Shown here in pieces: positions 2,996 to 57,845 of a stretch of 64,000 bases of DNA. The translations under genes and the position numbers were made by a program. The stretch spans positions 126,421,256 through 126,485,255 of the forward strand of contig NC_052149.1 in assembly GCF_902713615.1 (NCBI RefSeq), given 5' to 3'. Under the pieces are notes generated by a model. It saw nothing but the letters and a program-made list of their open reading frames with translations. It did not search any database and had not been told where the DNA came from. Source of the DNA: Scyliorhinus canicula. Its lineage: Eukaryota. Position 1 is the first letter of the stretch, and the number at the start of each line of letters is the position of its first letter.

Positions 2996-3294
2996 GTATC
3001 AGTGGAGACATCATCATGACCCAGTCTCCCACGGTGCTGTCATTGAGCCTGGGCCAGACCGCAACCATCACCTGTACGGCCAGTCAATCTGCTCGCAGTT
3101 ATGTTAATTGGTATCAACAGCGAGACGGTCAGAAACCGGCTCTGCTGATCTATGATGCAACAACCCGATTCACAGGAATATCCGACCGATTCACCGGCAA
3201 TCAATATGGAACACGATTCACCCTAACAATCAGCAATGTACAGAATGAGGATGTCGCTGATTATTACTGTATGCAGGACAGCAACTGGCCCATA
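2996..3294 (+). CDS. IGKV: Ig kappa (type III/NS4-like) V gene segment 1
   Basis: [12 protein letters not shown]...TITCTASQ...WYQQR...[15 protein letters not shown]; conserved Cys-Trp-Cys; followed by a 12-RSS. Confidence 0.97.
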
Positions 3295-3322
3295 CACAGT
3301 GATACAGAGCCTTACAAAAACC
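3295..3322 (+). other. 12-bp-spacer RSS of V1
   Basis: CACAGTG-atacagagcctt-ACAAAAACC, perfect heptamer and nonamer. Confidence 0.98.
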
Positions 3323-3524
3323 TCAATACACACAGCCCCACCTCCTGTACTGACACATCCCACAGTTTTATATAATATAGAATAAAACAATTATAGGAAA
3401 CTGAACAAGTTATTTTCACTGTCCACTACACATTCCAGTCCCTATGGAGTCCACCACTCGCTGAAGGCCTTGGGTTTCCCTCTTACTCTTACAGCTGAAA
3501 GATTTATTATCTAAAATTAGAATT

Positions 3525-3711
3525 TAGATGGGGCTGGTTTAGCACAGTGGGCTAAGACAGCTGGCTTGTAATGCAGAATTAAATCAGCAGAGTGCATTCA
3601 ATTCCCGTACCGGCCTCCTCCAACAGGTGCCGGAATGTGGCGACTAGGGGCTTTTCACAGTGACTTCATTGAGACCTACATGTGACAATAAGCGATTATT
3701 ATTATTATTAT
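3525..3711 (+). mobile_element. tRNA-headed SINE (ggggctggtttagcacagtgg family) inserted between V1 and J1
   Basis: Absent at the paralogous cluster-2 site (attagaattctctactctc, ~44418-44436); AATT duplication at 3521-3524 and 3712-3715; (att)n tail. Confidence 0.9.
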
Positions 3712-3842
3712 AATTCTCAACTCTCCCAACAAAGCACAGAGACAATGAGAGAAACAGAGAGTGAGAAAGCGTGAGAGAGAAAGACATGAGTGAGTGAGAG
3801 ACAGAGAGAGGGTGAGAGTGAGTGAGTGAAGCAGAGAGCAGA

Positions 3843-3881
3843 GGTTTTTGTACAGCCCCTGCACTGGAAGCTGTCAGTGTG
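3843..3881 (-). other. 23-bp-spacer RSS of J1
   Basis: GGTTTTTGT-23 bp-CAGTGTG; heptamer one mismatch from CACTGTG with the CAC end intact. Confidence 0.97.
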
Positions 3882-3916
3882 GCTTACGTTCGGTAAAGGA
3901 ACCAAGCTCAGACTGA
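3882..3916 (+). CDS. IGKJ: Ig kappa J segment 1 (LTFGKGTKLRL)
   Basis: FGxG motif; GTAAGT donor at 3917; phase compatible with C exon. Confidence 0.97.
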
Positions 3917-4029
3917 GTAAGTAAACCCCAATCCTCCGTTATTAACCCTTTCAATACTGAAACTTTCTCAAACACAAATGCTGAATAGTTGAAGGTGTTA
4001 GTGGGGAGCTGCAGTGAATGAAATGGTTC

Positions 4030-4705: not shown

Positions 4706-4744
4706 ACTTCAGACCCACACATCCCATAAATTAACTTTTAAAAA

Positions 4745-5585
4745 TGGCCCCAACTCCACTTTCCTGTCGGTCCCCATAACCCTTGACCCCCTTCAATGAG
4801 AAATCTGTCTAACTCAGCCTGGAATATATTCAATGCCCCAGCATGCACTGCTCTCTGGGAAAGAGAATTCCAAAAACTAACGACCCTCTGAGAGAAGAAA
4901 TTCTTCCTCATCTCCGCCTTTAATGGAGATCCCTTATTTTTAAACTGTGTCCACTCATTCTATATTCCACACGAGGGGAAACATTCTCTCAGCATCCATC
5001 CTGTCAAGCTCCCTCGGAATCTTATGTGTTTCAATAAGATTACCTCTCATTCTGCAATGAGTACAGACCCAACCAGCTCAACCTTTCCTCATCAGACATT
5101 CCATTCCTCAGTGGAATCAGCCCAGTGAACCTTCTCTGAACTGCTTCCAATGTCGGAACATCCGTCCTTAAGTAAGGAGACCAACACTGTACCCAGTACT
5201 CACGGTGTAGTCTGCCCAATATGCTGTATTGATGGAGCAAGACTTCCCTACTTTTATACTCCATCCCCCTTGTAATAAAGGACAACATTCCATTGACCTT
5301 CCTCATCACTTGCTGTACCTGCAGGTTAACTTTCTGTGATTCATACACAAGGACACCCAGATCCCTCTGTACCACAGCTTTCTGCAGTCTCTCTCCATTT
5401 CAATAATATTCTGCTTTTCTATTCTCCCTAACAAAGTGGACAAGCTCACATTTCCCCATATGATACTCCATCTGTCAAATGTTCTCCCCACTCACTGAAC
5501 CTATCAATATCCCTTTTCAGACTCTGTGTCCTCCTCACAACTTGCTTTCCTAACTATCATTTTATCATCAGCAAATTTAGCTACA
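4745..5585 (-). mobile_element. CR1 LINE 3' fragment shared by both J-C introns
   Basis: Minus-strand MVQRDLGVLVYESQKV...LEAVQRRFTGLIP; paralogue at ~46400-47410. Confidence 0.85.
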
Positions 5586-8805: not shown

Positions 8806-8987
8806 GGGCTGGTTTAGCTCACTCAGCTAAATCGCTGGCTTTTAAAGCAGACCAAGCAGGCCAGCAGCACGGTTCGATTCCCGTACCAGCCTCCCCGGAC
8901 AGGCGCCGGAATGTGGCGACTAGGGGCTTTTCACAGTAACTTCATTGAAGCCTACTCGTGACAATAAGCGATTTTCATTTCATTCAT
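8806..8987 (+). mobile_element. tRNA-headed SINE (same family as 3525) inside Gypsy integrase
   Basis: Interrupts the RRRA/RQSVYW integrase sequence. Confidence 0.85.
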
Positions 8988-9494: not shown

Positions 9495-9670
9495 GGGGCT
9501 GGTTTAGCACAGTGGGCTAAACAGCTGGCTTGTAAAGCAGAACAAGGCCAGCAGCGCGGGTTCAATTCCCCTACCAGCCTCCCGAACAGGCGCCGGAATG
9601 TGGCGACTAGGGGCTTTTCACGGTAACTTAATTTGAAGCCTACTTGTGACAATAAGCGATTTTCATTTAA
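9495..9670 (+). mobile_element. tRNA-headed SINE (same family as 3525) inside Gypsy integrase
   Basis: ggggctggtttagcacagtggg head, gacaataagcgattttcatt tail. Confidence 0.85.
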
Positions 9671-10709
9671 TCTCATTATCACCTGCTCAGATGCTAATAG
9701 TTAGCTGAATTTGCACAACATTACCTGAGATCACCATTCCAGACATGAATGATCAAGAGATACACAACCGTATCAGATCAAGAAAAGAGAAGCAAAAAGA
9801 GGACTATGATAAACAAACAAAACCTCTACCTGGATTAAAAGAAAGTGACTTTGTACACATTCAGAATCCTGATGGTGGATGGTAACAAAGAGCGAAAGTT
9901 CGAAGACAAGTTGCACCCAGAAAACACAGATATACACGGAACGCGCAAATATCAGAACCCACAAATATACACACAACACATAAATATACACAAAGACACA
10001 CAAATATACACAGAATTCAGAAATACTTACAACAGCATGGATGGAGAAGAATAAACAAACAAAATTACAAAAAAGCAAATATATGCAGAGCAGATAACTA
10101 TAGAGTTCAGAATATAAATATTTGCACATTGAATACTGAGAAATGCACACACACACATACAGACAACATAATGCATTAATATACACAACACTCCGATTGT
10201 TTCTGACAAGCCCTGAGTTTGGCATCAACATCTTAAATTTAAACAATATATTTTTGATTGCAAAATCCAAATGTTGAATGTAAGCTGTGAACAGCAGAGA
10301 CCCCGGCACTGATCCTTGGGGAACACCACTTCCCACCTTCTGCCACTCCGAAAATCCACCCTTTACTCCCACTATCTGCTTTCTGTCTTGAAGACAGCGA
10401 GCAATCCATTCCGCCACTTATCCCCGACTCCACATCCTCTGACTTATTCGTTAATCTATTCTGGGGAACCTTACCGAAGGTCGTTAGAAAACCCTAATAA
10501 ATTAGATCAACTGCACTCAGTGTCTGCTCTCTCTGTCACCTCCTCAAAATATTCAATCATGTTGGTCGGGTAAAATTTTCCCTTTTGAAATTCTATGCTG
10601 ACTGTTAATCTAAAATACAATCAAAAAACAAAAATATACAAACAGAATATTCAAATGTACACAGGATTCACTAATACACAACAATTAAATTCCTTCTCTT
10701 CTCTTCCAG

Positions 10710-12170: not shown

Positions 12171-15100
12171 GGGAGCAATGTAACTGGGAATGAACAGGCT
12201 CCTGTTTTGGGAGTGTTTAGTGGGGTGTTTCCCGGAGCCTGCAGTGCTGAAAATGATCCCGTTATTAATGGGGACTCTGGGATATTTGGGCCTTGGTGAG
12301 GAAGGAGCCTTCGAGGCCGCACTGACATCCACTTCCTGTGAGCTGTGCCCGTCAGTGCAGGGAGAGATCAGGGGGTGATCTTTAAATGCTGCCCCCATCC
12401 CTCAACTCCCACCGCGGCCTCCGGATTCCCCAAATTACTGATGAGGGGGTCCTCAAGCCCCCTTTATCTCACTTGATAAGGGCAGGGAACCCCCGGGCCT
12501 GATCTCAGCCATGGGCAACCTGCCAGCTGGGCCTCAAGGCACTGCCAGTCTGTCACCGACATGTCCTGGGTTCAGCAGGTGATAAATAAGATGCATGACC
12601 CCCTCTGAGCACATGCAGATGTCAGGCCACTCTTTACAAACAGAAAGGGGTACCACTCGATGAACGTGGAGCTGGTGTGTGATCATGAGCTGCACATCAA
12701 GTACGCCTCCGCCCAACACTCGGGCAGTGTGCACGACGCCTTCTTCCTGGCACACTTGACGGTTACTGGCTTCATTGAGGCACCCCCCCCCCCCCCCCCC
12801 CCCCGGCTGAGGAGTTGGCTCCTGAGTGACCGCTGTGGTCATGGCTGATGATGCTTATCCGAAGGCCACAGACTGACGTGGGGACCCGCCAGGCCTCCTC
12901 CGACAAGAAGGATGCGAGGTAGGGCGAGGATGGGCAGGACAACACGTCCTGGGGGGCTGGACAACGCATGCGCCTGACCCTCTTATCACCTCCAGGTTCA
13001 CTGACTAGAGGGCCTAGGTATAAGCACGGACGTCCCATCCCACCAGCCTACCCTCCGGCCGCCACCCCCTCCCATGAAAACCCTCCCATGATTCTTACCT
13101 GCAGGCGGCAGGCCCTGGGTTGGTCCATGGGATGCAGGATGGTGACAACCCGCTCTGCGATGAGTTCTGGTGCTCCACATCGTTTGACAACATCTGACTC
13201 CTGCCCACGGTAGCATTTCCCATTGTCCACCTGAGTGATCCCTGCCTGCGAGTTGGCCATTCCATCACACGGTCCCATCAAACCCTTGGGGGGATGGAGA
13301 TGGGGACAGTGGGGGGGCACCAGGGTAGTATGTGCTGGCTGAACTGGGGACCCTACACCATGCCCACCCCCAACATCCACCCATCACCCCACCACTCCTG
13401 CGGCCAGCCCAGACTAGCCAATCCCTCACACCCTTCTGACAGAGCACCGGGACAGGTGTTTAATGTGAACAAATATGTACAGCTTTGTGCCCTCGCCTCT
13501 AACACTGTCCTGTGTGATCCCATGCCGACTTAACATGCCTAACTTTCTGGCCTTATGGGCCCGAACGCTACATCGAGGTAGATCCTCAGGTGGTACATCA
13601 GGAATTGAGGCGGCCTGCTTGATTCCCGCCATGCGACCTGGGTCTCTGTTGGCGGTCGTCTTCAGGAGCGACCGGGTCTGGATGGGCCCGTCTGCTGCCC
13701 ATGTGTCCCAGGTGGCGTGGTGTTGTCCAGTTCTGCCTACTGTCTATCAGATGCACCAGGAAGAGGAGAGGAGGTGTCCGAGGTGCTGCGGTGTCCTGGC
13801 ACCTCTCCTGCATGAGTCACCAGCCCCATCACCTCCTCCTCCCTCGGGGTGTCCGATGGCCCCCGGGCTACTCCATGGGACAGGGGTGTGAAGGGAGCTA
13901 ACCCGTGAGGCTCCCCGTCACTTGGCACTGCCTGCTGATACCCTGAGGCATGACCCGCTGTGACTGGGCCATGCTCTGGAGAGCCGTTGCAATGCCCAGG
14001 TGACCCTGTGAGAGGGCAGCCCTGTCCTGGGCCTTGGCCACTGCCCGCACAGAGTGCCCAGACCTTGGACATCCTGACCAATGACCAAAACCTTCGCCCC
14101 CAAGGCATCCAGCGTGAATGCCACCCATGCGGTGTTGCCCTGGCAGGCACACATGGTCGGCACCACCTCCTGCTTCTGTATGCGGTTCGACTCCTCCGCC
14201 TGCACCTGTAGGTGCTGGATGCTCACCGACAACCCCTCATGTAGTCCCTGGCTCTGTGACTGCATCTCCACTATCGATGGGACTGCCCATTCCAGAAGCC
14301 CAAAACCCTTCTGGACGGCCGCTGGCCCTGGGGTCAGTTCGCCCTCTGACCATCCGCCCCCTCGTGGGTTCCTACCTCCACCTGATGTACTGCAGTATGT
14401 GTGTGGTGCGCACCAGATAGTGTCCCAGGAGCCTCTTCACTAAAGTGCCCAACCCAGGTGAGTGTCTCTGGGATGGTGGAGGGTGTTGGAGACGCTGTGA
14501 TGGGAAGTCGGTGTCGACACCGGACTAGTGCTCCGGGGTGTCTGAGGCTGCGGGTCGAGGGCTCCTGTCCATGTCCATGTCCTCCTCCTCCTCGCTGCTC
14601 TCCTCCTGGGGTTATAATTGTTATTGGGGTCGGGGGCGTGGGGTACCAGAAGGGCCCGCCTCATCGCCAGGTGATCCTGCAAGGCACAAGACAAGATGCA
14701 TGATTTGATCGCGGGTTTAGGGTGGCAGGTGGTGGAGGGGGCAGCGTGGGGGGGTGTGGGGGTGGTGGTGGGGGGGTGTGGGGATGGTGGAAGGGTGGTG
14801 GAGGGAGTGGAGTGGGGTGGTGGAGGGGGCAGTGTAGGGGGGTGTGGGGATGGTGGAAGGGTGGTGGGGGGTGTGGGGGTGGGGTGGTGGAGGGGGCAGT
14901 GTAGGGGGGTGTGGGGATGGTGGAAGGGTGGTGGGGGGTGTGGGGGTGGGGTGGTGGAGGGGGCAGTGTAGGGGGGTGAGGGGATGGTGGAAGGGTGGTG
15001 GGGGGTGTGGGGTGGGGTGGGGTGGTGGAGGGGGCAGTGTAGGGGGGTGTGGGGATGGTGGAAGGGTGGTGGGGGGTGTGGGGTGGGGTGGGGTGGTGGA

Positions 15101-17600
15101 GGGGGCAGTGTAGGGGGGTGTGGGGATGGTGGAAGGGTGGTGGGGGGTGTGGGGTGGGGTGGTGGAGGGGGCAGTGTAGGGGGGTGTGGGGATGGTGGAT
15201 GGGGGTGGGGGGTGTGGCGGTGGTGGTGGTGGAGGGGGCAGTTTGGAGGGGTGTGGGGATGGTGGAGGGGTGGTGGGGTTGTGGGGGTGGGGGTGGTGGA
15301 GGGGGCAGTGTGGGGGGGTGAGGGGATGGTGGATGGGTGGTGGGGGGTGTGGGCTGGTGGTGGTGGAGGCGGCAGTGTAGGGGGCTGTGGGGCTGGTGGA
15401 AGGGTGGTGGGGGTTGTGGGGGTGGGGGTGGTGGAGGGGGCAGTGTGGGGGGGTGAGGGGATTGTGGAAGGGTGGTGGGGGGTGTGGGGTGGGGTGGTGG
15501 AGGGGGCAGTGTAGGGGACTGTGGGGATGGTGGAAGGGTGGTGGGGGGTGTGGACTGGTGGTGGTGGAGGCGGCAGTGTAGGGGGCTGTGGGGATGGTGG
15601 AAGGGTGGTGGAGGGTGTGGGGGTGGGGGTGGTGACACACTTGCCGTGGGGAACCACAACCCAGCGGGGTCTCACTTGCTCGCCCAATGCCAACCTTCGC
15701 CTCAGTGGCTGCCCTCTGCAGGGCTACTAACCATGTCCAATGCCCGCTGTAGACCCCCTCTATTATTTTCCCTCATCCAGCGGATGTGGGCCTCCTTCTC
15801 CTGGGGGGGAGGAGACAGAAACACAGTGTTAGATAGTCGGATGCATGTAGCACAGGGGATGGGTAGCTGGTGACCTTCAGTGGCCAAGGCACCCACCATG
15901 GCGGCTGCCATAGGTGTTTACAGGTGGTGACGGTGCGGTTATTCAGTCGCCATCCAGGTAGGGGAGGGGTGGGGTTATGGGTGTGTGGGTCGGGGGTGAG
16001 GACCAGGAGCACCGTGCTGTCAACTCACCCTGGGCGCCCTGAGGAGGTCGTGCAGTTTCTTGTGGCACTGCTGGCCGGTGCTGGCAGCGTTGCCCACGGC
16101 GGCGTTCACAACCTCTCCCACCTGGGCCCAGGCCCGTGCACGGTGGTGGATGCTAACCTCCTCCCCACCCCGAGGTACAGGGAAGCCCGACCCTCCTCCA
16201 CTGCACCCAGTTGTGTCTCCAGTTACAGGTCTGTGAATCGCGGTGCCCCTCTCCTTGTTGCCATCTTGTTGTCTGGAATGGGTGTGTGTAGAGTGCTTTT
16301 CTGCAGCTGCAGCTTGTCAACCTCTTGAGTGTCAATCCCGACTCCGGCGAATACCACACCGGGTTTCATTGGAATCGCTCGTGTTCCGTGTGGTGCCGGT
16401 GCTAGCTCATTAATGGTTGATGAATTGCTCTGGAAATAGCGCCAATTTTCCTGTCATAGAACACCACTGATTCAGTCAACACTTGGTGGTGTTATTCTCC
16501 GGCCTCGCTGCGCTCTCGCTCAAGCAAAACAAGGCCGGTGAATAGCGGGAGAAGTTGAAAATGAGATCCGCGCCAAGTGCCAAACAGTTTGCGATGTAAC
16601 CAGCCGCTCCCATAGGCCAAATCAGGATCTCGCCGTAGCGCGGCAAGAAACCAATTATCACCACGTAAGCCCCATTTCCATACAATTAACTGGAGGCACC
16701 GCATATTCAATGGCCTCCTGTGATTCAGCGGCCTCCCCAGTAAGTGACCACGCTGGCGCTAATTAGTGCTCCTTTTGAAAAACGTGAACCTGGTGGAAGG
16801 GGTTCTGTGGGAGAGCCGAGAAGGTGAGTAGCCATCTTTACTCACAAAGAGCCCGGGGGCACTGGGCTTGCCACCCCAGTGCTCGAAGACGGGTGGGGAT
16901 CCTTGGCAGGGGGTGCGTGACACTCTGCAGGGATGGGCTACCATGGGAGGGTGGGGGGATGCGCTGGGGGGGCAACCGGGGGTCAACCACGTTCAGCACC
17001 ATCATGCCAACCTGTGGATCATGTGCACCCATTCCAGGGACAGCCCTTGCCCCTGCCCATCTGGCCCAATGACCACCCACAGCCCCCACCGACTGCCAAG
17101 GCCTCTAGCCATGCGGCTGAGGTTATTGCTAATAGGAAATTGGCAATCGTGGTTAAGTGAGCACTTCACACAACCCAAGTGGATTCCCGTGGGTGGGTGG
17201 GCCATGTAGCATGTGGGAGTCATTGCCCAGAATCCCAATCACACCTTGATGCCTGGACAATGAGCTTGAACAGTGTGGCAGGCAACACCACACACACAAC
17301 AGCCAACATCTGACCACTGACTGGATGGGACACTGCACTGGGGACATGCCCACGGCCAGAGGGTGGGAGAGCAGCATGGGGGGGGTTGGGAGGGGGTGCT
17401 GTTGGATGCCGGGATAGATGGGCCAAGGGTTCAGAGGTCGGCCCACATTGCAGAAGAAAGTGACAGAGGCATCATACCGGTTGTGCACAAGGGTGTTTAT
17501 TGTGTGTAACAATTCAACACTCGCCCAATGGCAACGCCTCCTCCCCCCCACCCCTTTCACCCCTTACCTAACCGCTCCCCACCCCATCCCCTCCCCTGGT
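12171..17600. mobile_element. Decayed PIF/Harbinger transposon complex: transposase remnant (+, ~12560-12960) and Myb/SANT-like gene remnant (-, ~16030-16300)
   Basis: NRKGYHSMNVELVCDH...SGSVHDAF Harbinger DDE motifs; convergent Myb-like APRFTD.. remnant; outer boundaries approximate. Confidence 0.75.
14716..15633 (+). repeat. G-rich minisatellite, G4-prone, inside the Harbinger remnant
   Basis: Repeated ggggtgtggggatggtggaagggtggtg...ggagggggcagtgtagg units, nearly C-free on the + strand. Confidence 0.9.
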
Positions 17601-35453: not shown

Positions 35454-38118
35454 GGGAGGCCGTGGTGTAGTGGTAATGTCACTGGACTAGTAATCCAGAG
35501 GCCCAGGCTAATGCTCTGGTCACAGGTTCAAATCCCACCATGGCAGCTGGTGGAATTTAAATTAAATGAATAAATCTGGAATTAAAAGCTCGTCTCATTA
35601 ATGGTGACCATTGTTGTTTGTTGTTTGTTGGTTGTTGTAAAAACCCATCTGGTCAACTAATGTCCTTTAGGGAAGGGAATCTGCCGTCCTTACCTGGTCT
35701 GGCCTACATGTGACTCCAGACCCACAGCAATGTGGTTGACTCTGAAATAGCCACTCAGTTGTATCAAACCGCTGAAAATTCTAAAAGGAATGAAACCGAA
35801 CAGACCACCCGGCATCGACATAGACCCCGGAAACAACAACGGCAAACCCAGCCCTGTCGACCCTGCAAAGTCCTCCTTCCTGATATCTGGGGGCTTGTGT
35901 TAGAATTGGGAGAGCTGTCCCACAGACTAGTCAGCAACAGCCTGACATAGTCACACTCACAGAATCATACCTTACAGATAATGTCCCAGACACCACCATC
36001 ACCATCCCTGGGTATGTCCTGTCTCACCGGCAGGACAGGCCCAGCAGGGGTGGGGGCACAGTGGTATACAGTCAGGAGGGAGTCACCCTGGGAATCCTCA
36101 ACATTGAATCCAGACTCCATGTAGTCTCATGGTACCAGGTCAAACATGGACAAGGAAACCTCCTGCTGGTTACCATTTTCAGTCCCCACTCAGCTGATGA
36201 ATGAATACTTCTCCACGTTAAACACCACTTGAATCAAACACCACTTGAATGAGGGTAGAAATGGTGCAAATTGTATTCTGGCTGGGGGACTTCAATGTCC
36301 ATCAGTGTGTGGGTAGCATCATTACTGACCAAACTGTCCAGGTCCTAAAGGACATTATTGCTAGATTGTGGCTTCAGGTGGTGAGGGAACCAACAACAGG
36401 GAAAATCATACTTGACCCTATCCTCACCAACCTGCCTTCCATGAGGTATCTGTCCATGACTGTATGGGTAGAAGTGACCACCACACAGTCCTGCTGGAGA
36501 CAAAATCCCGTCTTCACATTGAGGATACCCTCCATGGTTTTGTGTGGCATTACCCACTCTGCTAACTGGGATAGATTTCTAAAAGATATAGCAGCTTCAG
36601 CCAGACATCCATCAGGTACTATCAGCAGCAGCAGGATTGTGCTCAAACACAATTTGTAACCTCCTATCCCCATTCCCCCAATCCAGGGGATCAACATCTG
36701 GTTCAATGAAGATTGCAGGGGGGGCACGCGAGGAGCTACGCCATGCAGACTGAAAAATGAGGTGTCAACCTAGTGAAGCTACAGGACTACTTTCATGTCA
36801 AACAGCTTAAGCAGCGGGTCACAGACAGAGCAAAGGGATGAACCAATTTATTAGATCTAAGTTCTGCAGTCCTGCCTGATCCACTGGTGAATGGTGGTGG
36901 ACAATAAACAACTCACTGGAGGAGGAGTCTCCACAAATATCCCCATCCTCAATGATGGAGGAACCCAGCTCATCTGTAGAACAGATCAGGCTGAGGCATT
37001 TGCAAACATCTTCAGTCAGAAGTGCCGAGTGGATGGCCCATCTCGGTCACCTGAAGTTCCCAGATGTCAGTCTTCACCCAATTGGATTCACTCCACGTGA
37101 TATCAGGAAATGGTTGAAGGCACTGGATACTGCAACGGCTATGGGCCCTGACAATATTCTGGGAAGAGTACTGAGACTTATGCTCCAGAACTTTCCCCTA
37201 GCCAAGCTGTTCCAGTACAGATACAACACTGGCGTCTACCCAGCAATGTGGAAAATTGCCCAGGTATGTCCTGTACACAAGAAACAGGACAAATCCTATT
37301 CAGCCATTTGCTGCCCCGTCCATCTGCACTTCATCATCAGTGAAGTGATGGAAGGTGTCATTAACAGCGCGATCATGAACTGAAATGAAATGAAATGAAA
37401 TGAAAATCGCTTATTGTCAGGAGTAGGCTTCAATGAAGTTACTGTGAAAAGCCCCTAGTCGCCACATTCCGGCGCCTGTCCGGGAGGCTGGTACAAGAAT
37501 CGAACCGTGCTGCTGGACTGCTTGGTATGCTTTAAGAGCCAGCGATTTAGCTGAGTGAGCTAAACCAGCCCCTGTGGCACTTACTCAGCAATAACCTGCT
37601 GTCTGATTCTCCGTTTGGTATCCGCCAGGGTCACTCAGCTCCTGTGATGGAATAATCCCCACTTCCCTGGATGAGTGCAGTTCCAATAACACTCAAGAAG
37701 CTCCACACCATCCAGAACAAAGCAGTCGCATGATTGGCTCCCCATCCACCACCCTCGGTATTCACTCCCTCCACCACTGATGCACTGCAGCAACTCACCA
37801 AGGTTACTTCAACATCCTCTTCGAAACCACGCCCACTATCATCTAGAAGGACAAAGGCAGGAGACACATGGGAACACCACCACCTGGAAGTTCTCCTCCA
37901 AGACACTCACCATCCTGACTTGAAAATATATCGGCCGTTTGTTCACTATCGCTCGGTAACATTCCTGGGACTTTCTCCCTAACAGCACTGTAGGTGTACC
38001 TGCACCTCAGAGCTACAGCAGTTGAAGAAGGCAGCTCACCACCACCTTCTAAGAGGCAATTAGGGATGGGCTATGAATGATACTCTGACCAGCGACACCC
38101 ACATCCCAGGAATGGAAT
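35454..38118 (+). mobile_element. Non-LTR retrotransposon (APE plus RT remnants) with a tRNA-like 5' head
   Basis: A box TGGTGTAGTGG 35462-35472; B box GGTTCAAATCC 35525-35535; APE region (LTESYL..RQDRPSRGGGTVVY); RT MWKIAQVCPVHKKQDKS; clade not assigned. Confidence 0.75.
37378..37572 (-). mobile_element. tRNA-headed SINE (same family as 3525) inserted in the LINE RT
   Basis: (tgaaa)n tail; rc head aaaccagcccc. Confidence 0.85.
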
Positions 38119-42169: not shown

Positions 42170-42513
42170 ACAATTTGTTCATGGGGTGTGGATGTCGCTG
42201 GCTGGGTCAGCATTTATTCCCATTCCTGAGAGCATTCACGAGTCAACCACATTGCTGTGGGTCTGGAATCACATTTAAACCAGAACACAGGTAAGGATGA
42301 CAGATTTCCTTCCCTATTGGACATCAGTGTATCAAATGAGTTTTAACGACAATGGTTTCATGGTCAGCGTTAGACTTTTAATTTTAGATATTTATTATTG
42401 AAATCAAATTTTACCATCAGCCACGGTGGGATTTGAACCCTGGTCCTCAGAGCAGGTCCCCTGGGTCTCTGGATTACACGTCCAGCGACAATACCACTAT
42501 AGCAATGCCTCCC
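42170..42513 (-). mobile_element. Full tRNA-headed SINE matching both ends of the 35454 LINE
   Basis: B box rc at 42429-42439; core gacccacagcaatgtggttgactc; tail ccagcgacatccacacccc. Confidence 0.75.
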
Positions 42514-44177: not shown

Positions 44178-44205
44178 CACAGTGACACAGAGCCTTACAA
44201 AAACC
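44178..44205 (+). other. 12-bp-spacer RSS of V2
   Basis: CACAGTG-acacagagcctt-ACAAAAACC. Confidence 0.98.
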
Positions 44206-44562
44206 TCAATACGCACAGTCCCACCTCCTGTACTGACACATCCCACAGTTTTATATAATATATAATAAATACAGGTTAGGAAACTGAACAAATGATTCTC
44301 ACCGTCCACTGCACACTCCAGTCCCTGTGGTGTCCACAGCTCACTGAAGGCCTCAAGTTTCCATCTTACTCTCTGTGTCCACGTATGAAGAGCAGCTGAA
44401 AGATTTATCATCTAAAATTAGAATTCTCTACTCTCCCAACAAAGCACAGAGACATTGAGAGAAACAGAGTGAGAAAGAGTGAGAGAGAAAGACATGAGTG
44501 AGTGAGAGACAGAGAGAGAGACAGAGAGAGTGTGAGAGTGAGTGAGTGAAGCAGAGAGCAGA

Positions 44563-44636: not shown

Positions 44637-45451
44637 GTAAGTAAACCCCAATCCTCCGTTATTAACCTTTTCAATACTGAAACTTTCTCAAACACAAATG
44701 CTGAATAGTTGAAGGTGTTAGTGAGGAGCTGCAGTGAATGAAATGGTTCATTGAAGAACACTGTGTAGAACAGGGTGCCCAGCTGTATTTCTTTAGTTCC
44801 ATTCCCCCCCTTTAAGCAGCAAGATATAAGTAAGCAGCTTTTACCCACCGTGTGGAGGAGATCTGGACGTTTGCAGACTGTGTTCACATTCCTGGACCAT
44901 GGAGTGAAATCACTCACTAGACTCCTGTCAGTCTGTGTGTGACAGACACGGGCAGAGTTTGATGTGAGCTCTGGCTCCCTGTCACACTCTCTGATATAAC
45001 TGATCACAGCAGCAGCAGCAGCACAGTGAGACACCGAGGTCCCACTTCCCCCAGCTTTAACTCTGCTCTCTCCACTCCCTGCTTATCTCTTAGCAAAGTT
45101 CTGATGACAAACAGGTCCAGCAGGGCTCACAATCCAGTGGCTTCAGTGTTCCAGGCTTTTGGGGAGACTCTCAGTTACTTTCTCTTTGGGTCGAGTTCAG
45201 TCTGATATTTATTCCTGATCCAATATTCCTGAAAATCCCTGGAGATATTTTTATTGTTTGATGTGATGTGTGATCTCTGGCTGGGTCAGCATTTATTGCC
45301 CATCCCTAATTGCCCTTGAACTGAGTGTCTTGCTCGGCCATTCCAGAGGACATTTCAGAATCAACACATTACTGAGGACCTGGAGTCACTTGTAGGCCGG
45401 ACAAGGTCAGGATGGCAGGTTCCCACTTCAGACCCACACATCCCATAATGG

Positions 45452-46391
45452 GGGCTGGATTGTCCGATTTTCAGGCTATACCCTGACACCGGCGTGGGAT
45501 CGGTGGCATTTTGCGAAAGGAAATTCAGCGCAAAATGGCCACCAATCCTCCATATGGTGGGGGGCTAGCAGGCAGGTAGCGTAGTGCACCTGGCTCTAGC
45601 TATCGATACAGCTGGAGAATTGCAGGGTCCATGGCCGCGCATGCGCACGGCTGCGCCGTTCAACATGGCGCCGGCCACACATGGATCCGGCCTGCCAAAT
45701 AGTGCTCCTTCTTTGGGCGGCTCGCAACACCTGACCACCCCCAACTGTTCTCCCAGTGTGGTGAATGTAACTCTGTAATTCACACTCTGATATATATATG
45801 AGACCGTACGATTGTAAGCGCAGTTGCGTTTCCCGACCACTAGGGGGAGTAGCTCTGGGAATGCTTAGCAGTTTGTACAGGGCTCCTCCCTTGGCCCTGC
45901 CCACTGCTCCTCCCCCTGGACTGCTGTATAAATATCGATGCCCAGAGCCAGCCGACCAGTTCATCGAGAGTTCAACGTGTAACAGGCTGGCTCTGTAGTA
46001 AGTAGATTAAAACCACTGTTCATATCTCAAAGCACGTGTCTAGTGAATTGATGGTCTCATCACCCAGCTCCTGCCAAAGATCCCCCAGCCAGGGGATCAG
46101 CTCTCCCCCGACGTCGGCGGTGCTGGACTCAGTCCGTAGCCGCCACGGTGAGATCCCGACATATAATAGCATGAGAGACCCACGCTGTCAAGAACTCGGC
46201 CGGTCGGGGGCGGAGGATCGTTGGGGGGGAGGGCGTCAGGCAACATCCTGAAGCCGTCCATACAGCAGTACACTGCTTTGGAGAGGGCGGAGCATCGCGA
46301 AACGGCGCCGCCCCCGATTTAGGATCGAACATTGATTCTCTGGCCGATCGCTGAACAAGATTTCGGTATCAGTGACCGGAGAGTCATGCCC
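45452..46391. mobile_element. Harbinger-type MITE specific to the cluster-2 intron
   Basis: TIR-like gggctggattgtcc / ggagagtcatgccc; absent at the cluster-1 site (~4728). Confidence 0.7.
45757..46062 (+). mobile_element. Gypsy solo LTR nested in the MITE
   Basis: TGTGG...CATCA ends; 5-bp TSD CCCAG at 45752-45756 and 46063-46067. Confidence 0.9.
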
Positions 46392-46399
46392 AGGAACTT

Positions 46400-47410
46400 T
46401 AAAAATGGCCTGAACTCCACTTTCCTGTCGGTCCCCATAACCCTTGACCCCCTCATCAATCAAAAATCTGTCTAATTCAGCCTTGAATATATTGAATGTC
46501 CCAGCATGCACTGCTCGCTGGGAAAGAGAATTCCAAAAACTAACGACCCTCTGAGAGAAGAAATTCCTCCTCACTCCGCCTTTAATGGAGATCCCTTATT
46601 TTTAAACTGTACCCACTAATTCTAGATTCCCCACGAGGGGAAACATTCTCTCAGCATGCACCCTGTCAAGCTCCCTCGGAATCTTATATATTTCAATAAG
46701 ATCACCTCTCATTCTGCAATGAGTACAGACCCAACCAGCTCAACCTTTCCTCATCAGACATTCCATTCCTCAGTGGAATCAGCCCAGTGAACCTTCTCTG
46801 AACTGCTTCCAATGTCCAAATATCCATCCTTAAGTAAGGAGACCAACACTGTGCTTAGTACTCACGGTGTAGTCTCCCCAATGTGCTGTATCGATGGAGC
46901 AAGGCTTCCCGACTTTTATACTCCATCCCCCCGTGTAATAAAGGACAACATTCCATTGACCTTCCTAATCACTTGCTGTACCTGCAGTTTAAACTTTCTG
47001 TGATTCATACACAAGGACACCCAGATCCCTCTGTACCACAGCTTTCTGCAGTCTCTCTCCATGTCAATAATATTCTGCTTTTCTATTCTCCCTAACAAAG
47101 TCGCTTATTGTCACGAGTAGGCTTTAATGAAGTTACTGTGAAAAGCCCCTAGTCGCCACATTCCGGCGCCTTCCCGTACCTGCCTCCCGGACAGGCGCCG
47201 GAATGTGGCGACTCGGGGCTTTTCACAGTAACTTCATTGAAGCCTACTCGTGACAATAAGCGATTTTCATTTCATTTTCATTTCAAGTGGACAAGCTCAC
47301 ATTTCCCCACATTATACTCCATCTGTCAAATGTTCTCCCCACTCACTGAACCTATCAATATCCCTTTTCAGACTCTGTATCCTCCTCACAACTTGCTTTC
47401 CTACCTATCA
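46400..47410 (-). mobile_element. CR1 3' fragment, paralogue of 4745-5585
   Basis: MRRNFFSQRVVSFWNSLSQR and YRGIWVSLCMNHRK on the minus strand. Confidence 0.85.
47102..47284. mobile_element. Fold-back (palindromic) SINE 3'-end insertion
   Basis: ~70-bp inverted arms around a ~23-nt loop; AAGT duplication at 47098-47101 and 47285-47288; empty site at ~5430-5440 in cluster 1. Confidence 0.9.
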
Positions 47411-56287: not shown

Positions 56288-57845
56288 AGGCGGGGGGGTG
56301 GTCGGGGTGGTGGGGAGGGGGGCGGGGGGGTGCTGAGGGGGGCGGGTGTGGCCGGGGAGGGGGGCGGGGGAGTGGCCGGGGTGGTGGGGAGGGGGGCGGG
56401 GGGGTGGCCGGGGTGGAGGGGAGGTGGGCGGGGGGGTGGGGATGGGGGCGGGGGGGTGACTGTGATGGTGGGGAGGGGGGCATGGGTGTGGCTGCGGTGG
56501 AGGGGAGGGGGGCAGGGGCGCGGATGGGGTGGAGGAGAGGGGGGTGGGGGTGTGGCCGAGGTGGTGGGGAGGGGGGCGGGGGGGTGGCCGGGGAGGGGGG
56601 CGACGGTGGGCAGGGTGGTGGGGATGGGAGGCGGGGGAGTGGCCGGGGTGGTGGGGAGGGGGGCAGGTTTGTGGCCGGGGTGGTGGGCAAGGGGGCGGGG
56701 GGGTGGCCGGGGTGGTGAGGAGGCGGGCGGGGGTGTGGACGGGGTGGTGGGGAGGGGAGGTTGGCCGGGGAGGGGGGCGGGGGAGTGGCCTTTGTGGTGG
56801 GGAGGGGTGTGGCCGGGTTGGTGGGGAGGGGGGCGTTGGAGTGGCCGGGGGTGTGGGGTGGGGCGGGGGGGCTGTCTGGTGTGGTGGGGAGCGGGGTGGG
56901 GGGTGGCCGGGGTGGAGGGGAGGGGGGGGGCGGGGGGATGGTCGGAGAGGGGGGCGGGCGCTGGCTGTGGTGGTGGGGAGGGGGGCGGGGGGGTGGCCGG
57001 GGTGGTGGGGAGGGGGGCGGGGGGGTGGCCAGGGTGGTGAGGAGGGGGGGTTGGCCGGGGAGGGGGGCGGGGGAGTGGCCTTTGTGGTGGGGAGGGGGTC
57101 GGGGGGGTGGTGGGGAGGGGGGCGGTGGCTGGGGTGATGGGGAGGGGGGTGGCCGGGGTGGTGGGGAGGGGGGCGATGGAGTGGCCGGGGGTGTGGGGTG
57201 GGGCGGGGGGGCTGTCTGGTGTGGTGGGGAGCGGGGTGGGGGGGTGGCCGGGGTAGAGGGGAGGGGGGCGGGGGGATGGTCGGAGAGGGGGGCGGGCGCT
57301 GGCTGTGGTGGTGGGGAGGGGGTCTGGGGGGGTGGCCGGGGTGGTGGGGAGGGGGGCGGGGTGGTGGCCGGGTTGGTGGGGTGGGGAGGGGGGCGTCGTG
57401 GTGGCCGGGGTGTTGGGGAGGTGGGCGGGGGGGTGGCCGGGGAGGGGGGCAGGGGCTGGCTGTGGTGGCGGGGAGGGGGGGCGGGGGGGCGGGCCGGGGT
57501 GGTGGGACTGGGGGCGTGGTGGTGGCCGAGATGGCCGGGGAGGGGGGGCGGGGGGGTGGCCGGGGTGGAGTGGAGGTGGGCGGGGGGTGGGGATGGCCGG
57601 GTGGTGGGGAGGTGGGCGTGGGGGTGGCTGCAGTGGAGGGGAGGGGAGCGGGGGGCGGATGGGGTGGTGGGGAGGGGGGCGGGGGAGGTGGCCGGGGAGG
57701 GGGGCGAGGGATGAGAGGCGGGGGAGTGTCCGGGGTGGTAGGCAGGGGGGCGGTGGGGTGGCCGGGGTGGTGAGGAGAGGGGCGGGGGTTGTGGCCGGAG
57801 TGGTGGGGATGGGCAGGGGGGCGGGGGGTTGCTGGGGCGTTGGAG
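56288..57845 (+). repeat. G-rich minisatellite, G4-prone, about 1.55 kb
   Basis: Repeated ggccggggtggtggggaggggggcggggg units. Confidence 0.9.

What the first reader, a model, noticed from the sequence alone, without database searches (positions are those of the whole stretch)
3525..3711. SINE with a built-in RSS-like motif inserted between V1 and J1; this copy has a perfect heptamer
Seen: the SINE carries CACAGTG (3656-3662), a 22-bp spacer and ACAATAAGC (3685-3693; 7/9 match to ACAAAAACC), oriented like the V 12-RSS. A second CACAGTG lies in its A box (3543-3549). Other copies read CACAGTA-22-ACAATAAGC (8932-8969; rc at 37409-37446; both arms at 47.1-47.3 kb) or CACGGTA-23-ACAATAAGC (~9618-9656). 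Only the V-J copy has the perfect heptamer. Four of the five insertions lie inside V-to-C units. Established: RAG tolerates 23+/-1 spacers; the T in the nonamer A-tract should weaken binding. Inference: a retroposon family spreading cryptic 23-RSSs. Here it could pair with the V1 12-RSS 340 bp away (inversional, non-productive join), act as a decoy lowering V1-J1 use, or seed RAG off-target breaks genome-wide.
Basis: partly seen in the sequence, partly recalled or inferred. Interest (0 to 1): 0.72.

Follow-up and report, generated by a model that had tools for sequence, protein, structure and literature searches.

The report
Shark SINE with chance RSS-like motif
A common shark jumping element (SINE) landed between the V and J segments of one antibody light-chain gene and happens to carry a sequence resembling a recombination signal, but the evidence points to a chance look-alike of a very common kind and not to a working signal.

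Summary
A 187-bp tRNA-derived SINE (3525-3711, 4-bp target duplication AATT) sits in the V1-J1 gap of a shark kappa-type V-J-C cluster. It carries CACAGTG (3656-3662), a 22-bp spacer and ACAATAAGC (3685-3693), oriented like the V 12-RSS. The paralogous cluster at 44.4 kb is the empty site, so the insertion post-dates the cluster duplication.

The functional reading is not supported.
- The family letter at heptamer position 7 is A in 96-99% of read depth. Published assays show A and G are near-equivalent there, so the "perfect" heptamer is a private and largely irrelevant transition.
- The family-level motif (13/16) occurs by chance 3-4 times per 64 kb. Relaxed functional rules give about 2 sites per kb here.
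- The coding flank is poly-T, an unfavourable flank type.
- A second abundant variant of the element has about 34-bp spacing.
- V1-type CDR3 joined to J is expressed in two RNA studies.
- No joint at the SINE heptamer was listed, although that test has low power.

This is an ordinary SINE insertion carrying a weak cryptic RSS, like millions of others. The scan had not noted this motif before.

The parts
3525..3711 (+). tRNA-derived SINE copy (187 bp): tRNA-like head with A-box and B-box-like sequences, a conserved core, a tail, and an (ATT)n 3' end
   Evidence: BLAST finds 5 further copies or arms in the window with unrelated flanks. They are aligned. Huge multi-copy depth in all four runs. 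The less-decayed copy at 8808-8891 gives a weak tRNA covariance-model match of 17.9 bits, below the gathering score.
3521..3524 (.). target-site duplication AATT, left copy (the right copy is at 3712-3715)
   Evidence: Comparison with the empty paralogous site. The joint 3520->3712 has 4 ambiguous bases.
3712..3715 (.). target-site duplication AATT, right copy
3656..3693 (+). RSS-like motif: heptamer CACAGTG (3656-3662), 22-bp spacer, nonamer-like ACAATAAGC (3685-3693). The coding-flank side is GCTTTT.
   Evidence: The family majority letter at 3662 is A in 96-99% of depth.
3543..3549 (+). second CACAGTG, part of the Pol III A-box-like sequence of the tRNA-like head; the copy at 9508-9514 shares it
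   Evidence: No consensus-like nonamer lies at 12+/-1 or 23+/-1 from it. At 23 bp the 9-mer is GCAGAATTA, which passes only the relaxed rule.
3295..3322 (+). genuine V1 12-RSS (CACAGTG, 12-bp spacer, ACAAAAACC)
3843..3881 (-). genuine J1 23-RSS (read on the minus strand: CACACTG, 23-bp spacer, ACAAAAACC)
2998..3294 (+). V1 exon, an open kappa-type V. The leader exon ends near 2806-2809, and the 186-bp leader intron is spliced in RNA.
   Evidence: Translation; splice joint 2806->2993.
3882..3919 (+). J1 segment (approximate 3' end at the GTAAGT donor)
   Evidence: V-J joints land at 3882-3886.
44417..44430 (+). empty (pre-insertion) site in paralogous cluster 2; the junction is 44425|44426
8806..8984 (+). 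SINE copy in the J1-C1 intron (CACAGTA-22-ACAATAAGC at 8932-8969)
9495..9677 (+). SINE copy in the J1-C1 intron (CACGGTA-23-ACAATAAGC at 9619-9657)
37394..37572 (-). SINE copy upstream of V2, 96% identical to the 8806 copy
47101..47287 (.). single insertion in the J2-C2 intron made of two head-to-head arms of the SINE 3' part; the empty site in cluster 1 is at 5437|5438

Best explanation
This is an ordinary retroposition event. A tRNA-derived, LINE-dependent SINE inserted into the roughly 400-bp V-J spacer of one kappa-type light-chain cluster, after that cluster had been duplicated. The insert carried along the family's conserved core and tail.

That core and tail happen to contain CACAGTA, a 22-bp spacer and ACAATAAGC. 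The likely reasons are shared descent and perhaps constraints of the element's own life cycle, such as a candidate 3' hairpin recognised by the LINE reverse transcriptase (inferred, not shown). A private A-to-G transition in this decaying copy produced the textbook heptamer.

The motif was not shaped by RAG or for RAG. At most it is a weak cryptic 23-type RSS of a quality that is common in any vertebrate genome. It has no demonstrable effect on V1-J1 joining, and cluster 1 appears to remain rearranged and expressed.

Shown: SINE identity, insertion limits, empty site, family consensus, chance frequencies, and expression of V1-type V-J joints. Inferred: neutrality, and the reason for tail conservation.
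For: 1. The SINE has multiple dispersed copies, a target-site duplication and an exact empty site in the paralogous cluster. The empty-site form is also seen as a 191-bp skip in RNA contigs.
2. The family majority letter at 3662 is A: 97% of depth in X4, 98% in X14, 99% in the DNA run X10 and 96% in raw reads X23. The same copy has private changes at 3619, 3621, 3628, 3673, 3674 and 3680, a pattern of random decay.
3. Two of these changes break pairs of the consensus hairpin, so the tail is no longer under constraint in this copy.
4. Position 7 needs only a purine (heptamer rule CACNRYR). CACAGTA scored 0.051 and CACAGTG 0.060 with the GA spacer, the one context of that table where both are listed (PMC9723617).
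5. Poly-pyrimidine coding flanks (TTT, CTT) gave 5% and 3% of joints, against 92% for a good flank (PMC9723617). The flank here is GCTTTT.
6. Sites at 13/16 or better are expected 2.7-4.2 times per 64 kb by chance, and 3 unrelated ones are present. The relaxed rule (CACNRYR plus R-W-R-W at nonamer positions 4-7) gives 134 hits, or 2.1 per kb.
7. RIC-passing cRSSs occur about once per 500-720 bp in human and mouse (PMC2896083).
8. The heptamer lies in a 50-bp block (3622-3671) with about 40-fold more depth than the rest of the element. That block is shared with other elements whose downstream sequence places the ACAAT-type motif about 34 bp away, so RSS-like spacing is a subfamily accident.
9. 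Joints 3286-3291 -> 3883-3884 keep the V1-specific CDR3 end and join J in two independent RNA studies. Their depth is not lower than that of a V2-like junction.
Against: - At the stricter 14/16 level this is the only non-genuine RSS-like site in 64 kb (0.2-0.5 expected). It lies inside a transcribed V-J interval, where RAG would be concentrated. Depth of 178-400 over 3402-3509 and a perfect 92-nt contig at 3684-3775 in RNA run X4 show that transcription.
- The nonamer keeps the R-W-R motif at positions 4-6, and T at position 5 is tolerated by the RAG1 nonamer-binding domain (PMC12711392).
- 23+/-1 spacers are accepted as RSS lengths (PMC2896083, PMC12711392).
- The read test had little power. 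Contigs drop rare forms, and the only raw-read run had fewer than 10 reads over V.
- The hairpin explanation for tail conservation has no covariation support, and the fold energies are not better than shuffles.
Confidence: 0.8

Rival explanations
1. Weak but real RAG off-target. The SINE motif is occasionally cleaved as a 23-type cryptic RSS and paired with the V1 12-RSS. This inverts 3295-3655 and inactivates cluster 1 on that chromosome. The frequency would be low, detectable only by sensitive junction capture, and without selective consequence.
For: - Perfect CAC and the CACNRYR heptamer form.
- R-W-R-W in the nonamer (PMC12711392).
- A 22-bp spacer, within the accepted 23+/-1 range.
- The correct orientation for an inversional 12/23 pair, 354 bp from the V1 heptamer.
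- The interval is transcribed in germline configuration.
- It is the only non-genuine site at 14/16 or better in the window.
Against: - The poly-T coding flank is unfavourable.
- The spacer is one base short and nonamer position 8 is G.
- No such joint was listed in two lymphoid RNA contig sets or in a raw-read run (low power).
- V1-type V-J joints are expressed.
- Dozens of other CAC sites in the same cluster satisfy relaxed rules.
Confidence: 0.13
2. Biologically meaningful decoy, or a family-wide RAG hazard. The SINE family acts as a dispersed set of cryptic 23-RSSs that measurably lowers V1-J1 use, or shapes genome instability or heritable rearrangement in sharks. The G allele would be selected in, or tolerated specifically at, the V-J site.
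For: - The motif is part of the family consensus in all 6 copies or arms in the window.
- The element is very abundant.
- Four of five insertions lie in V-to-C units (post-hoc p about 0.02).
- RAG has acted in shark germ cells, as germline-joined NS4 genes show (PMC2193156).
Against: - G versus A at position 7 is functionally near-neutral.
- The G is one of about 8 private substitutions.
- V1-type junction depth is not below V2-like junction depth (a crude measure).
- Another abundant variant has non-RSS spacing.
- The family-level motif is of chance quality.
- Five insertions cannot show enrichment, and SINEs commonly accumulate in or near genes.
Confidence: 0.05
3. The resemblance reflects descent. 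On this view the SINE tail derives from a RAG-like or Transib-like transposon end, whose inverted repeats resemble RSSs.
For: Only the heptamer/nonamer-like layout itself.
Against: - The heptamer lies inside a core shared with other SINEs, while the nonamer lies in a different module at variable distance, 22, 23 or about 34 bp.
- No inverted partner end and no transposase context are present.
- The element has a tRNA-like head, a simple-repeat 3' end and a short target duplication, which are features of retroposition.
Confidence: 0.01

Closest known systems
Cryptic recombination signal sequences (cRSSs) of vertebrate genomes
   Same: It has a CAC-initiated heptamer, a spacer near 23 bp and an A/T-rich nonamer-like 9-mer outside any gene segment. 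cRSSs are very common: about 1 per 500-720 bp pass RIC in human and mouse (PMC2896083), and 'millions' of potential sites exist (PMC12711392).
   Different: No cleavage or joining has been shown for this one. It is carried by a repeated element and sits between a real V and J only 354 bp from a bona fide 12-RSS, which is an unusual address.
tRNA-derived, LINE-dependent SINEs of cartilaginous fishes (such as the SacSINE1 / HE1 type families described in PMC5499810 and in the reviews found)
   Same: It has a tRNA-like head with A-box and B-box-like sequences, a conserved internal block shared between families, a 3' tail ending in a short tandem repeat, high copy number, short target duplications, and modular heads and tails.
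   Different: I could not align it to a named consensus, because none is held by the tools, and no partner LINE with this tail lies in the window. The family name is therefore left open.
Nurse-shark NS4 (kappa-type) split V-J-C light-chain clusters (PMC2193156)
   Same: The leader intron is 186 bp. The V-J intervening sequence is a few hundred bp (502-524 bp in NS4; 424 bp in cluster 2 and 587 bp in cluster 1 here). V carries a 12-RSS and J a 23-RSS, followed by a single C.
   Different: Cluster 1 here carries a 187-bp SINE in the intervening sequence. The NS4 paper does not use the word 'repetitive' at all (term search).
Isolated heptamer in the mammalian J-kappa to C-kappa intron that recombines with the kappa-deleting element (own knowledge, not tested here)
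   Same: It is a non-gene-segment heptamer inside a kappa V-to-C unit. Two further SINE copies lie in the J1-C1 intron.
   Different: No partner RSS of the complementary type was found downstream of C1. The scan at 13/16 or better found nothing in 11-34 kb. There is no evidence of use.

Membership tests
Functional 23-RSS (RAG recombination signal) | Heptamer begins with CAC and fits CACNRYR | tested here: met
   CACAGTG at 3656-3662. The rule comes from PMC9723617. The family form CACAGTA fits it equally.
Functional 23-RSS (RAG recombination signal) | Spacer of 23 bp (+/-1 tolerated) | tested here: met
   The spacer is 22 bp (3663-3684), at the edge of the accepted range. One copy has 23 bp (9626-9648). 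Another abundant variant has about 34 bp.
Functional 23-RSS (RAG recombination signal) | Nonamer able to bind the RAG1 nonamer-binding domain (consensus ACAAAAACC, or R-W-R at positions 4-6) | tested here: inconclusive
   It matches 7/9. Positions 4-7 are A-T-A-A, which fits R-W-R-W. Position 8 is G where both the canonical and non-canonical consensus have C (PMC12711392). The paper's scored nonamer tables are not held.
Functional 23-RSS (RAG recombination signal) | Flanks a gene segment, with a coding flank permissive for cleavage | tested here: not met
   The flank is SINE core sequence ending GCTTTT and there is no coding segment. Poly-pyrimidine flanks gave 3-5% against 92% (PMC9723617).
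Functional 23-RSS (RAG recombination signal) | Observed cleavage or joining in lymphocytes | tested here: inconclusive
   No joint at 3655|3656 appears among those listed for 4 runs. Five joints were not shown, contigs drop rare forms, and the raw-read run had fewer than 10 reads on V.
Functional 23-RSS (RAG recombination signal) | RIC23 score above the pass threshold (-58.45) | not testable with these tools
   The threshold is from PMC2896083. The model parameters are not available. By my own recollection, not checked here, RIC23 models score a fixed 39-mer. If so, a 22-bp spacer shifts the nonamer out of register to CAATAAGCG, a 4/9 match.
tRNA-derived LINE-dependent SINE | tRNA-related head with internal Pol III A and B boxes | tested here: inconclusive
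   A-box-like and B-box-like sequences are visible in the alignment. The Rfam tRNA model gives 17.9 bits, below the gathering score of 29, on the 8808-8891 copy. It gives nothing on the V-J copy, and ARAGORN calls none.
tRNA-derived LINE-dependent SINE | Dispersed multi-copy element with unrelated flanks, a target-site duplication and an empty site | tested here: met
   There are 6 copies or arms in the window. The depth is very high in the DNA and RNA runs. The AATT duplication and exact empty sites are seen for two insertions.
tRNA-derived LINE-dependent SINE | 3' tail shared with a partner LINE | not tested
   No LINE with this tail lies in the window. Earlier scan notes propose Rex1-type or other partners for SINEs of this genome, but I could not link them to this tail.
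V-SINE / DeuSINE superfamilies | Presence of the superfamily's conserved central domain | not tested
   A 50-bp block (3622-3671) is shared with far more abundant elements, as expected for a superfamily core. No reference consensus was available for comparison (one search failed; PMC5499810 gives no sequence in its text).

The most novel reading that the evidence does not exclude
The SINE-borne 23-type cryptic RSS inside the V1-J1 recombination centre is cleaved by RAG at a measurable rate. It pairs with the V1 12-RSS and inverts 3295-3655, which silences that cluster. This would happen somatically and, because RAG has acted in shark germ cells, perhaps heritably. The family's many copies would then be a major class of RAG off-targets in sharks.
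Probability: 0.06. Interest if true: 0.55.

Novelty: new member of a known kind. Interest (0 to 1): 0.2.

Why it matters
If the motif were a working RAG target, an abundant retroposon would be seeding recombination signals through a shark genome and inside antigen-receptor clusters. That would bear on RAG off-target load and on how cluster-type loci decay or are silenced.

As it stands, the value is more modest. The insertion is a clean presence/absence marker that dates SINE activity to after the duplication of two kappa clusters. It shows that a V-J spacer can take a 187-bp insert, apparently without stopping V1-type rearrangement. It also offers a natural, easily assayed test substrate for cRSS rules: G against A at heptamer position 7, T at nonamer position 5, and a poly-T flank.

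Tried and rejected
- Rfam scan of 3400-3900 found no match. ARAGORN did not call any SINE head as a tRNA.
- RNA folding of five core/tail copies gave z-scores between -0.5 and +0.6, so they are no more stable than shuffles.
- RNAalifold on six copies gave a consistent hairpin with the heptamer in the loop. None of its 17 pairs shows a compensatory change, so the 'RT-recognition hairpin' explanation of tail conservation stays untested.
- Read laying gave no joint at the SINE heptamer. Sensitivity was low, and paralogues map together at 90% likeness. It also could not tell whether organism B carries the insertion, because there were holes at 3402-3509.
- The nonamer-score supplement of PMC12711392 is not held.
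- The original V-SINE paper is not held.
- Literature searches for SINE + shark + RSS, and for cryptic RSS + SINE, found nothing specific.
- A scan-notes search by sequence was blank.
- A RIC score was not computed because no model parameters were available.
- A Transib/RAG-transposon origin of the motif was rejected because of the element's modular structure.
- A kappa-deleting-element-like role for the J-C intron copies was considered. No complementary RSS lies downstream of C1.

Full report
**Setting**

The window holds two paralogous kappa-type (NS4-like) V-J-C light-chain clusters of a shark.

- Cluster 1 has a leader, a 186-bp leader intron that is spliced in RNA (joint 2806->2993), and an open V exon at 2998-3294.
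- Its V 12-RSS is CACAGTG, a 12-bp spacer and ACAAAAACC (3295-3322).
- Its J 23-RSS spans 3843-3881, with a perfect nonamer, a 23-bp spacer and the heptamer CACACTG read on the minus strand. J starts at 3882.
- Its C exon lies at about 10.7-11.04 kb.
- Cluster 2 repeats this layout at 43.6-52.1 kb.
- The 186-bp leader intron and the V-J spacer of a few hundred bp match nurse-shark NS4 genes (PMC2193156).

- CACAGTG lies at 3656-3662, followed by a 22-bp spacer and ACAATAAGC at 3685-3693.
- The A-box CACAGTG lies at 3543-3549.
8932-8969, 37409-37446 (-), 47103-47140 (-) and 47224-47261 have CACAGTA-22-ACAATAAGC. 9619-9657 has CACGGTA-23-ACAATAAGC.

**What the element is**

- BLAST finds six copies or arms with unrelated flanks.
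- The alignment shows a tRNA-like head with A-box and B-box-like sequences, a nearly invariant core and tail, and a short tandem repeat at the 3' end.
- The tRNA covariance model matches the best-preserved head only weakly (17.9 bits, below threshold).
- The V-J copy's head is 73% identical to the 8806 copy, while its core and tail are 90.5% identical. The element is therefore modular.
- Cluster 2 is an exact empty site: the flanks of 3525-3711 are contiguous at 44425|44426, with AATT duplicated in cluster 1.
- RNA contigs also show the 191-bp-shorter form with 4 ambiguous bases. This form could come from a paralogue or from an allele.
- The insertion therefore post-dates the cluster duplication, whose flanks are 89-97% identical.
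- None of the family's insertions is shared between the two clusters. The inverted pair at 47101-47287 is a single insertion whose empty site is 5437|5438 in cluster 1.

**Family-wide view from reads**

- Because the element is multi-copy, reads from all copies pile up on it.
- At 3662 the letter is A in 97% (X4), 98% (X14), 99% (X10, DNA) and 96% (X23, raw reads) of depth. The perfect heptamer is thus a rare variant at 1-4%.
- The V-J copy also differs from the majority at 3619, 3621, 3628, 3673, 3674 and 3680. Two of these changes break pairs of the consensus hairpin. It is a decaying copy, and the G is one transition among several.
- The 50-bp block 3622-3671, which contains the heptamer, has about 40 times the depth of the rest of the element. 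It is bounded by loose ends on both sides, so it is a core shared with other, more abundant elements.
- One abundant continuation after 3671 adds 12 bases, which puts the ACAAT-type motif about 34 bp from the heptamer.
- About 6% of raw reads carry an extra T, giving 23 bp.
- The RSS-like spacing is therefore a subfamily accident. It is not a conserved design.

**Is it more than chance?**

- With an obligatory CAC and spacers of 12+/-1 or 23+/-1, sites matching 14/16 or better number five in the window: four true RSSs plus this one. Markov shuffles give 0.2-0.5. One extra site is unremarkable.
- At the family's own level (13/16) shuffles give 2.7-4.2 per window, and three unrelated sites are present. 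A 190-bp element has roughly a 1% chance of carrying one, so among many repeat families some will.
- Under the relaxed functional rules of recent assays (CACNRYR, with R-W-R-W at nonamer positions 4-7) the window has 134 sites, or 2.1 per kb.
- RIC-passing cRSSs occur about once per 500-720 bp in human and mouse (PMC2896083).

**How good a signal would it be?**

In favour:
- The heptamer fits CACNRYR.
- The nonamer keeps R-W-R at positions 4-6, and T at position 5 is tolerated by RAG1 residue R391, whereas G or C is not (PMC12711392).
- 23+/-1 is the accepted spacer range.

Against:
- Position 7 needs only a purine. CACAGTA scored 0.051 and CACAGTG 0.060 with the GA spacer, the one context in PMC9723617 table 1 where both are listed. 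The G therefore adds little.
- The coding flank GCTTTT is of the poly-pyrimidine type that yielded 3-5% of joints against 92%.
- Nonamer position 8 is G.
- The spacer is one base short.
- By contrast, the true V RSS reads CACAGTG followed by AT, the top-ranked class.

With the same orientation as the V RSS, a 12/23 join would invert 3295-3655 and be non-productive. The motif cannot legitimately pair with the J1 23-RSS.

**In-vivo evidence**

- Runs X4 and X14 are RNA, since they contain the leader splice. They hold many V-J joints.
- Joints 3286-3291 -> 3883-3884 keep the V1-specific CDR3 end. They occur in both studies, at a depth (339 in X14) not below that of a V2-like junction (116).
- This is crude evidence, because contig depth is a poor measure and unseen identical paralogues are possible. 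It argues against a strong decoy effect.
- The V-J interval is transcribed in germline form: depth is 178-400 at 3402-3509, and a mismatch-free contig covers 3684-3775.
- No joint at 3655|3656 was listed, but the test has little power.

**Enrichment**

Four of five insertions lie in V-to-C units, which make up 26% of the window. The post-hoc binomial p is about 0.02. With n=5, and given the known tendency of SINEs to sit in or near genes, I give this no weight.

**Comparison and verdict**

- The element works like, and is best filed as, a tRNA-derived LINE-dependent SINE of cartilaginous fish. The family name is left open.
- The motif is best filed as a cryptic RSS of ordinary quality at an unusual address.
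- It fails one defining feature of a functional RSS, namely a permissive coding flank next to a gene segment. Evidence of use is lacking.
- Earlier scan notes gave context: these are shark kappa clusters, and the genome has modular SINE families with LINE-type tails. None addressed this motif.

Noticed in passing
window 3712-3842 and 44426-44562: A GA-rich tract lies directly 5' of both J 23-RSS nonamers. It has 14 and 17 GAGA motifs in 131 and 137 bp, against 7.2 per kb in the window as a whole, and is 76% purine. It is conserved between the clusters. It recalls the mouse J-kappa GAGA motifs reported as needed for nucleosome remodelling and V-kappa to J-kappa recombination (bioRxiv 10.1101/2025.01.21.634169; only the abstract was seen).
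   Followed up: partly
window 47101-47287: A single insertion consists of two head-to-head arms of the SINE 3' part, 71 bp reversed plus about 115 bp forward. The empty site is in cluster 1 at 5437|5438. It looks like a snap-back or template-switch product of retroposition. Both arms carry the RSS-like motif in opposite orientations.
   Followed up: partly
window 3295-3322 and 44178-44205: Both genuine V RSSs read CACAGTG followed by a spacer that starts with A then T or C. The V1 form (CACAGTG + AT) is the top-ranked heptamer and spacer-start class in mouse RAG high-throughput assays (PMC9723617 table 1). The J heptamer (CACACTG) departs from the CACNRYR rule.
   Followed up: no
window 35459-35545 and 42406-42513: ARAGORN calls a tRNA-Thr(AGT)-like sequence at 35459-35545. 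It has a 78%-identical reverse copy at 42406-42513. It is probably the head of another tRNA-derived repeat family upstream of V2.
   Followed up: partly
window 45448-46398: Cluster 2 has about 950 bp in the J-C intron that is absent from cluster 1, between paralogous blocks ending at 4729 and starting at 4737. This is another cluster-specific insertion, not examined.
   Followed up: no
window 14720-15634 and 56294-57806: These long stretches match each other at about 67% identity in many registers. That suggests diverged tandem arrays downstream of both clusters.
   Followed up: no
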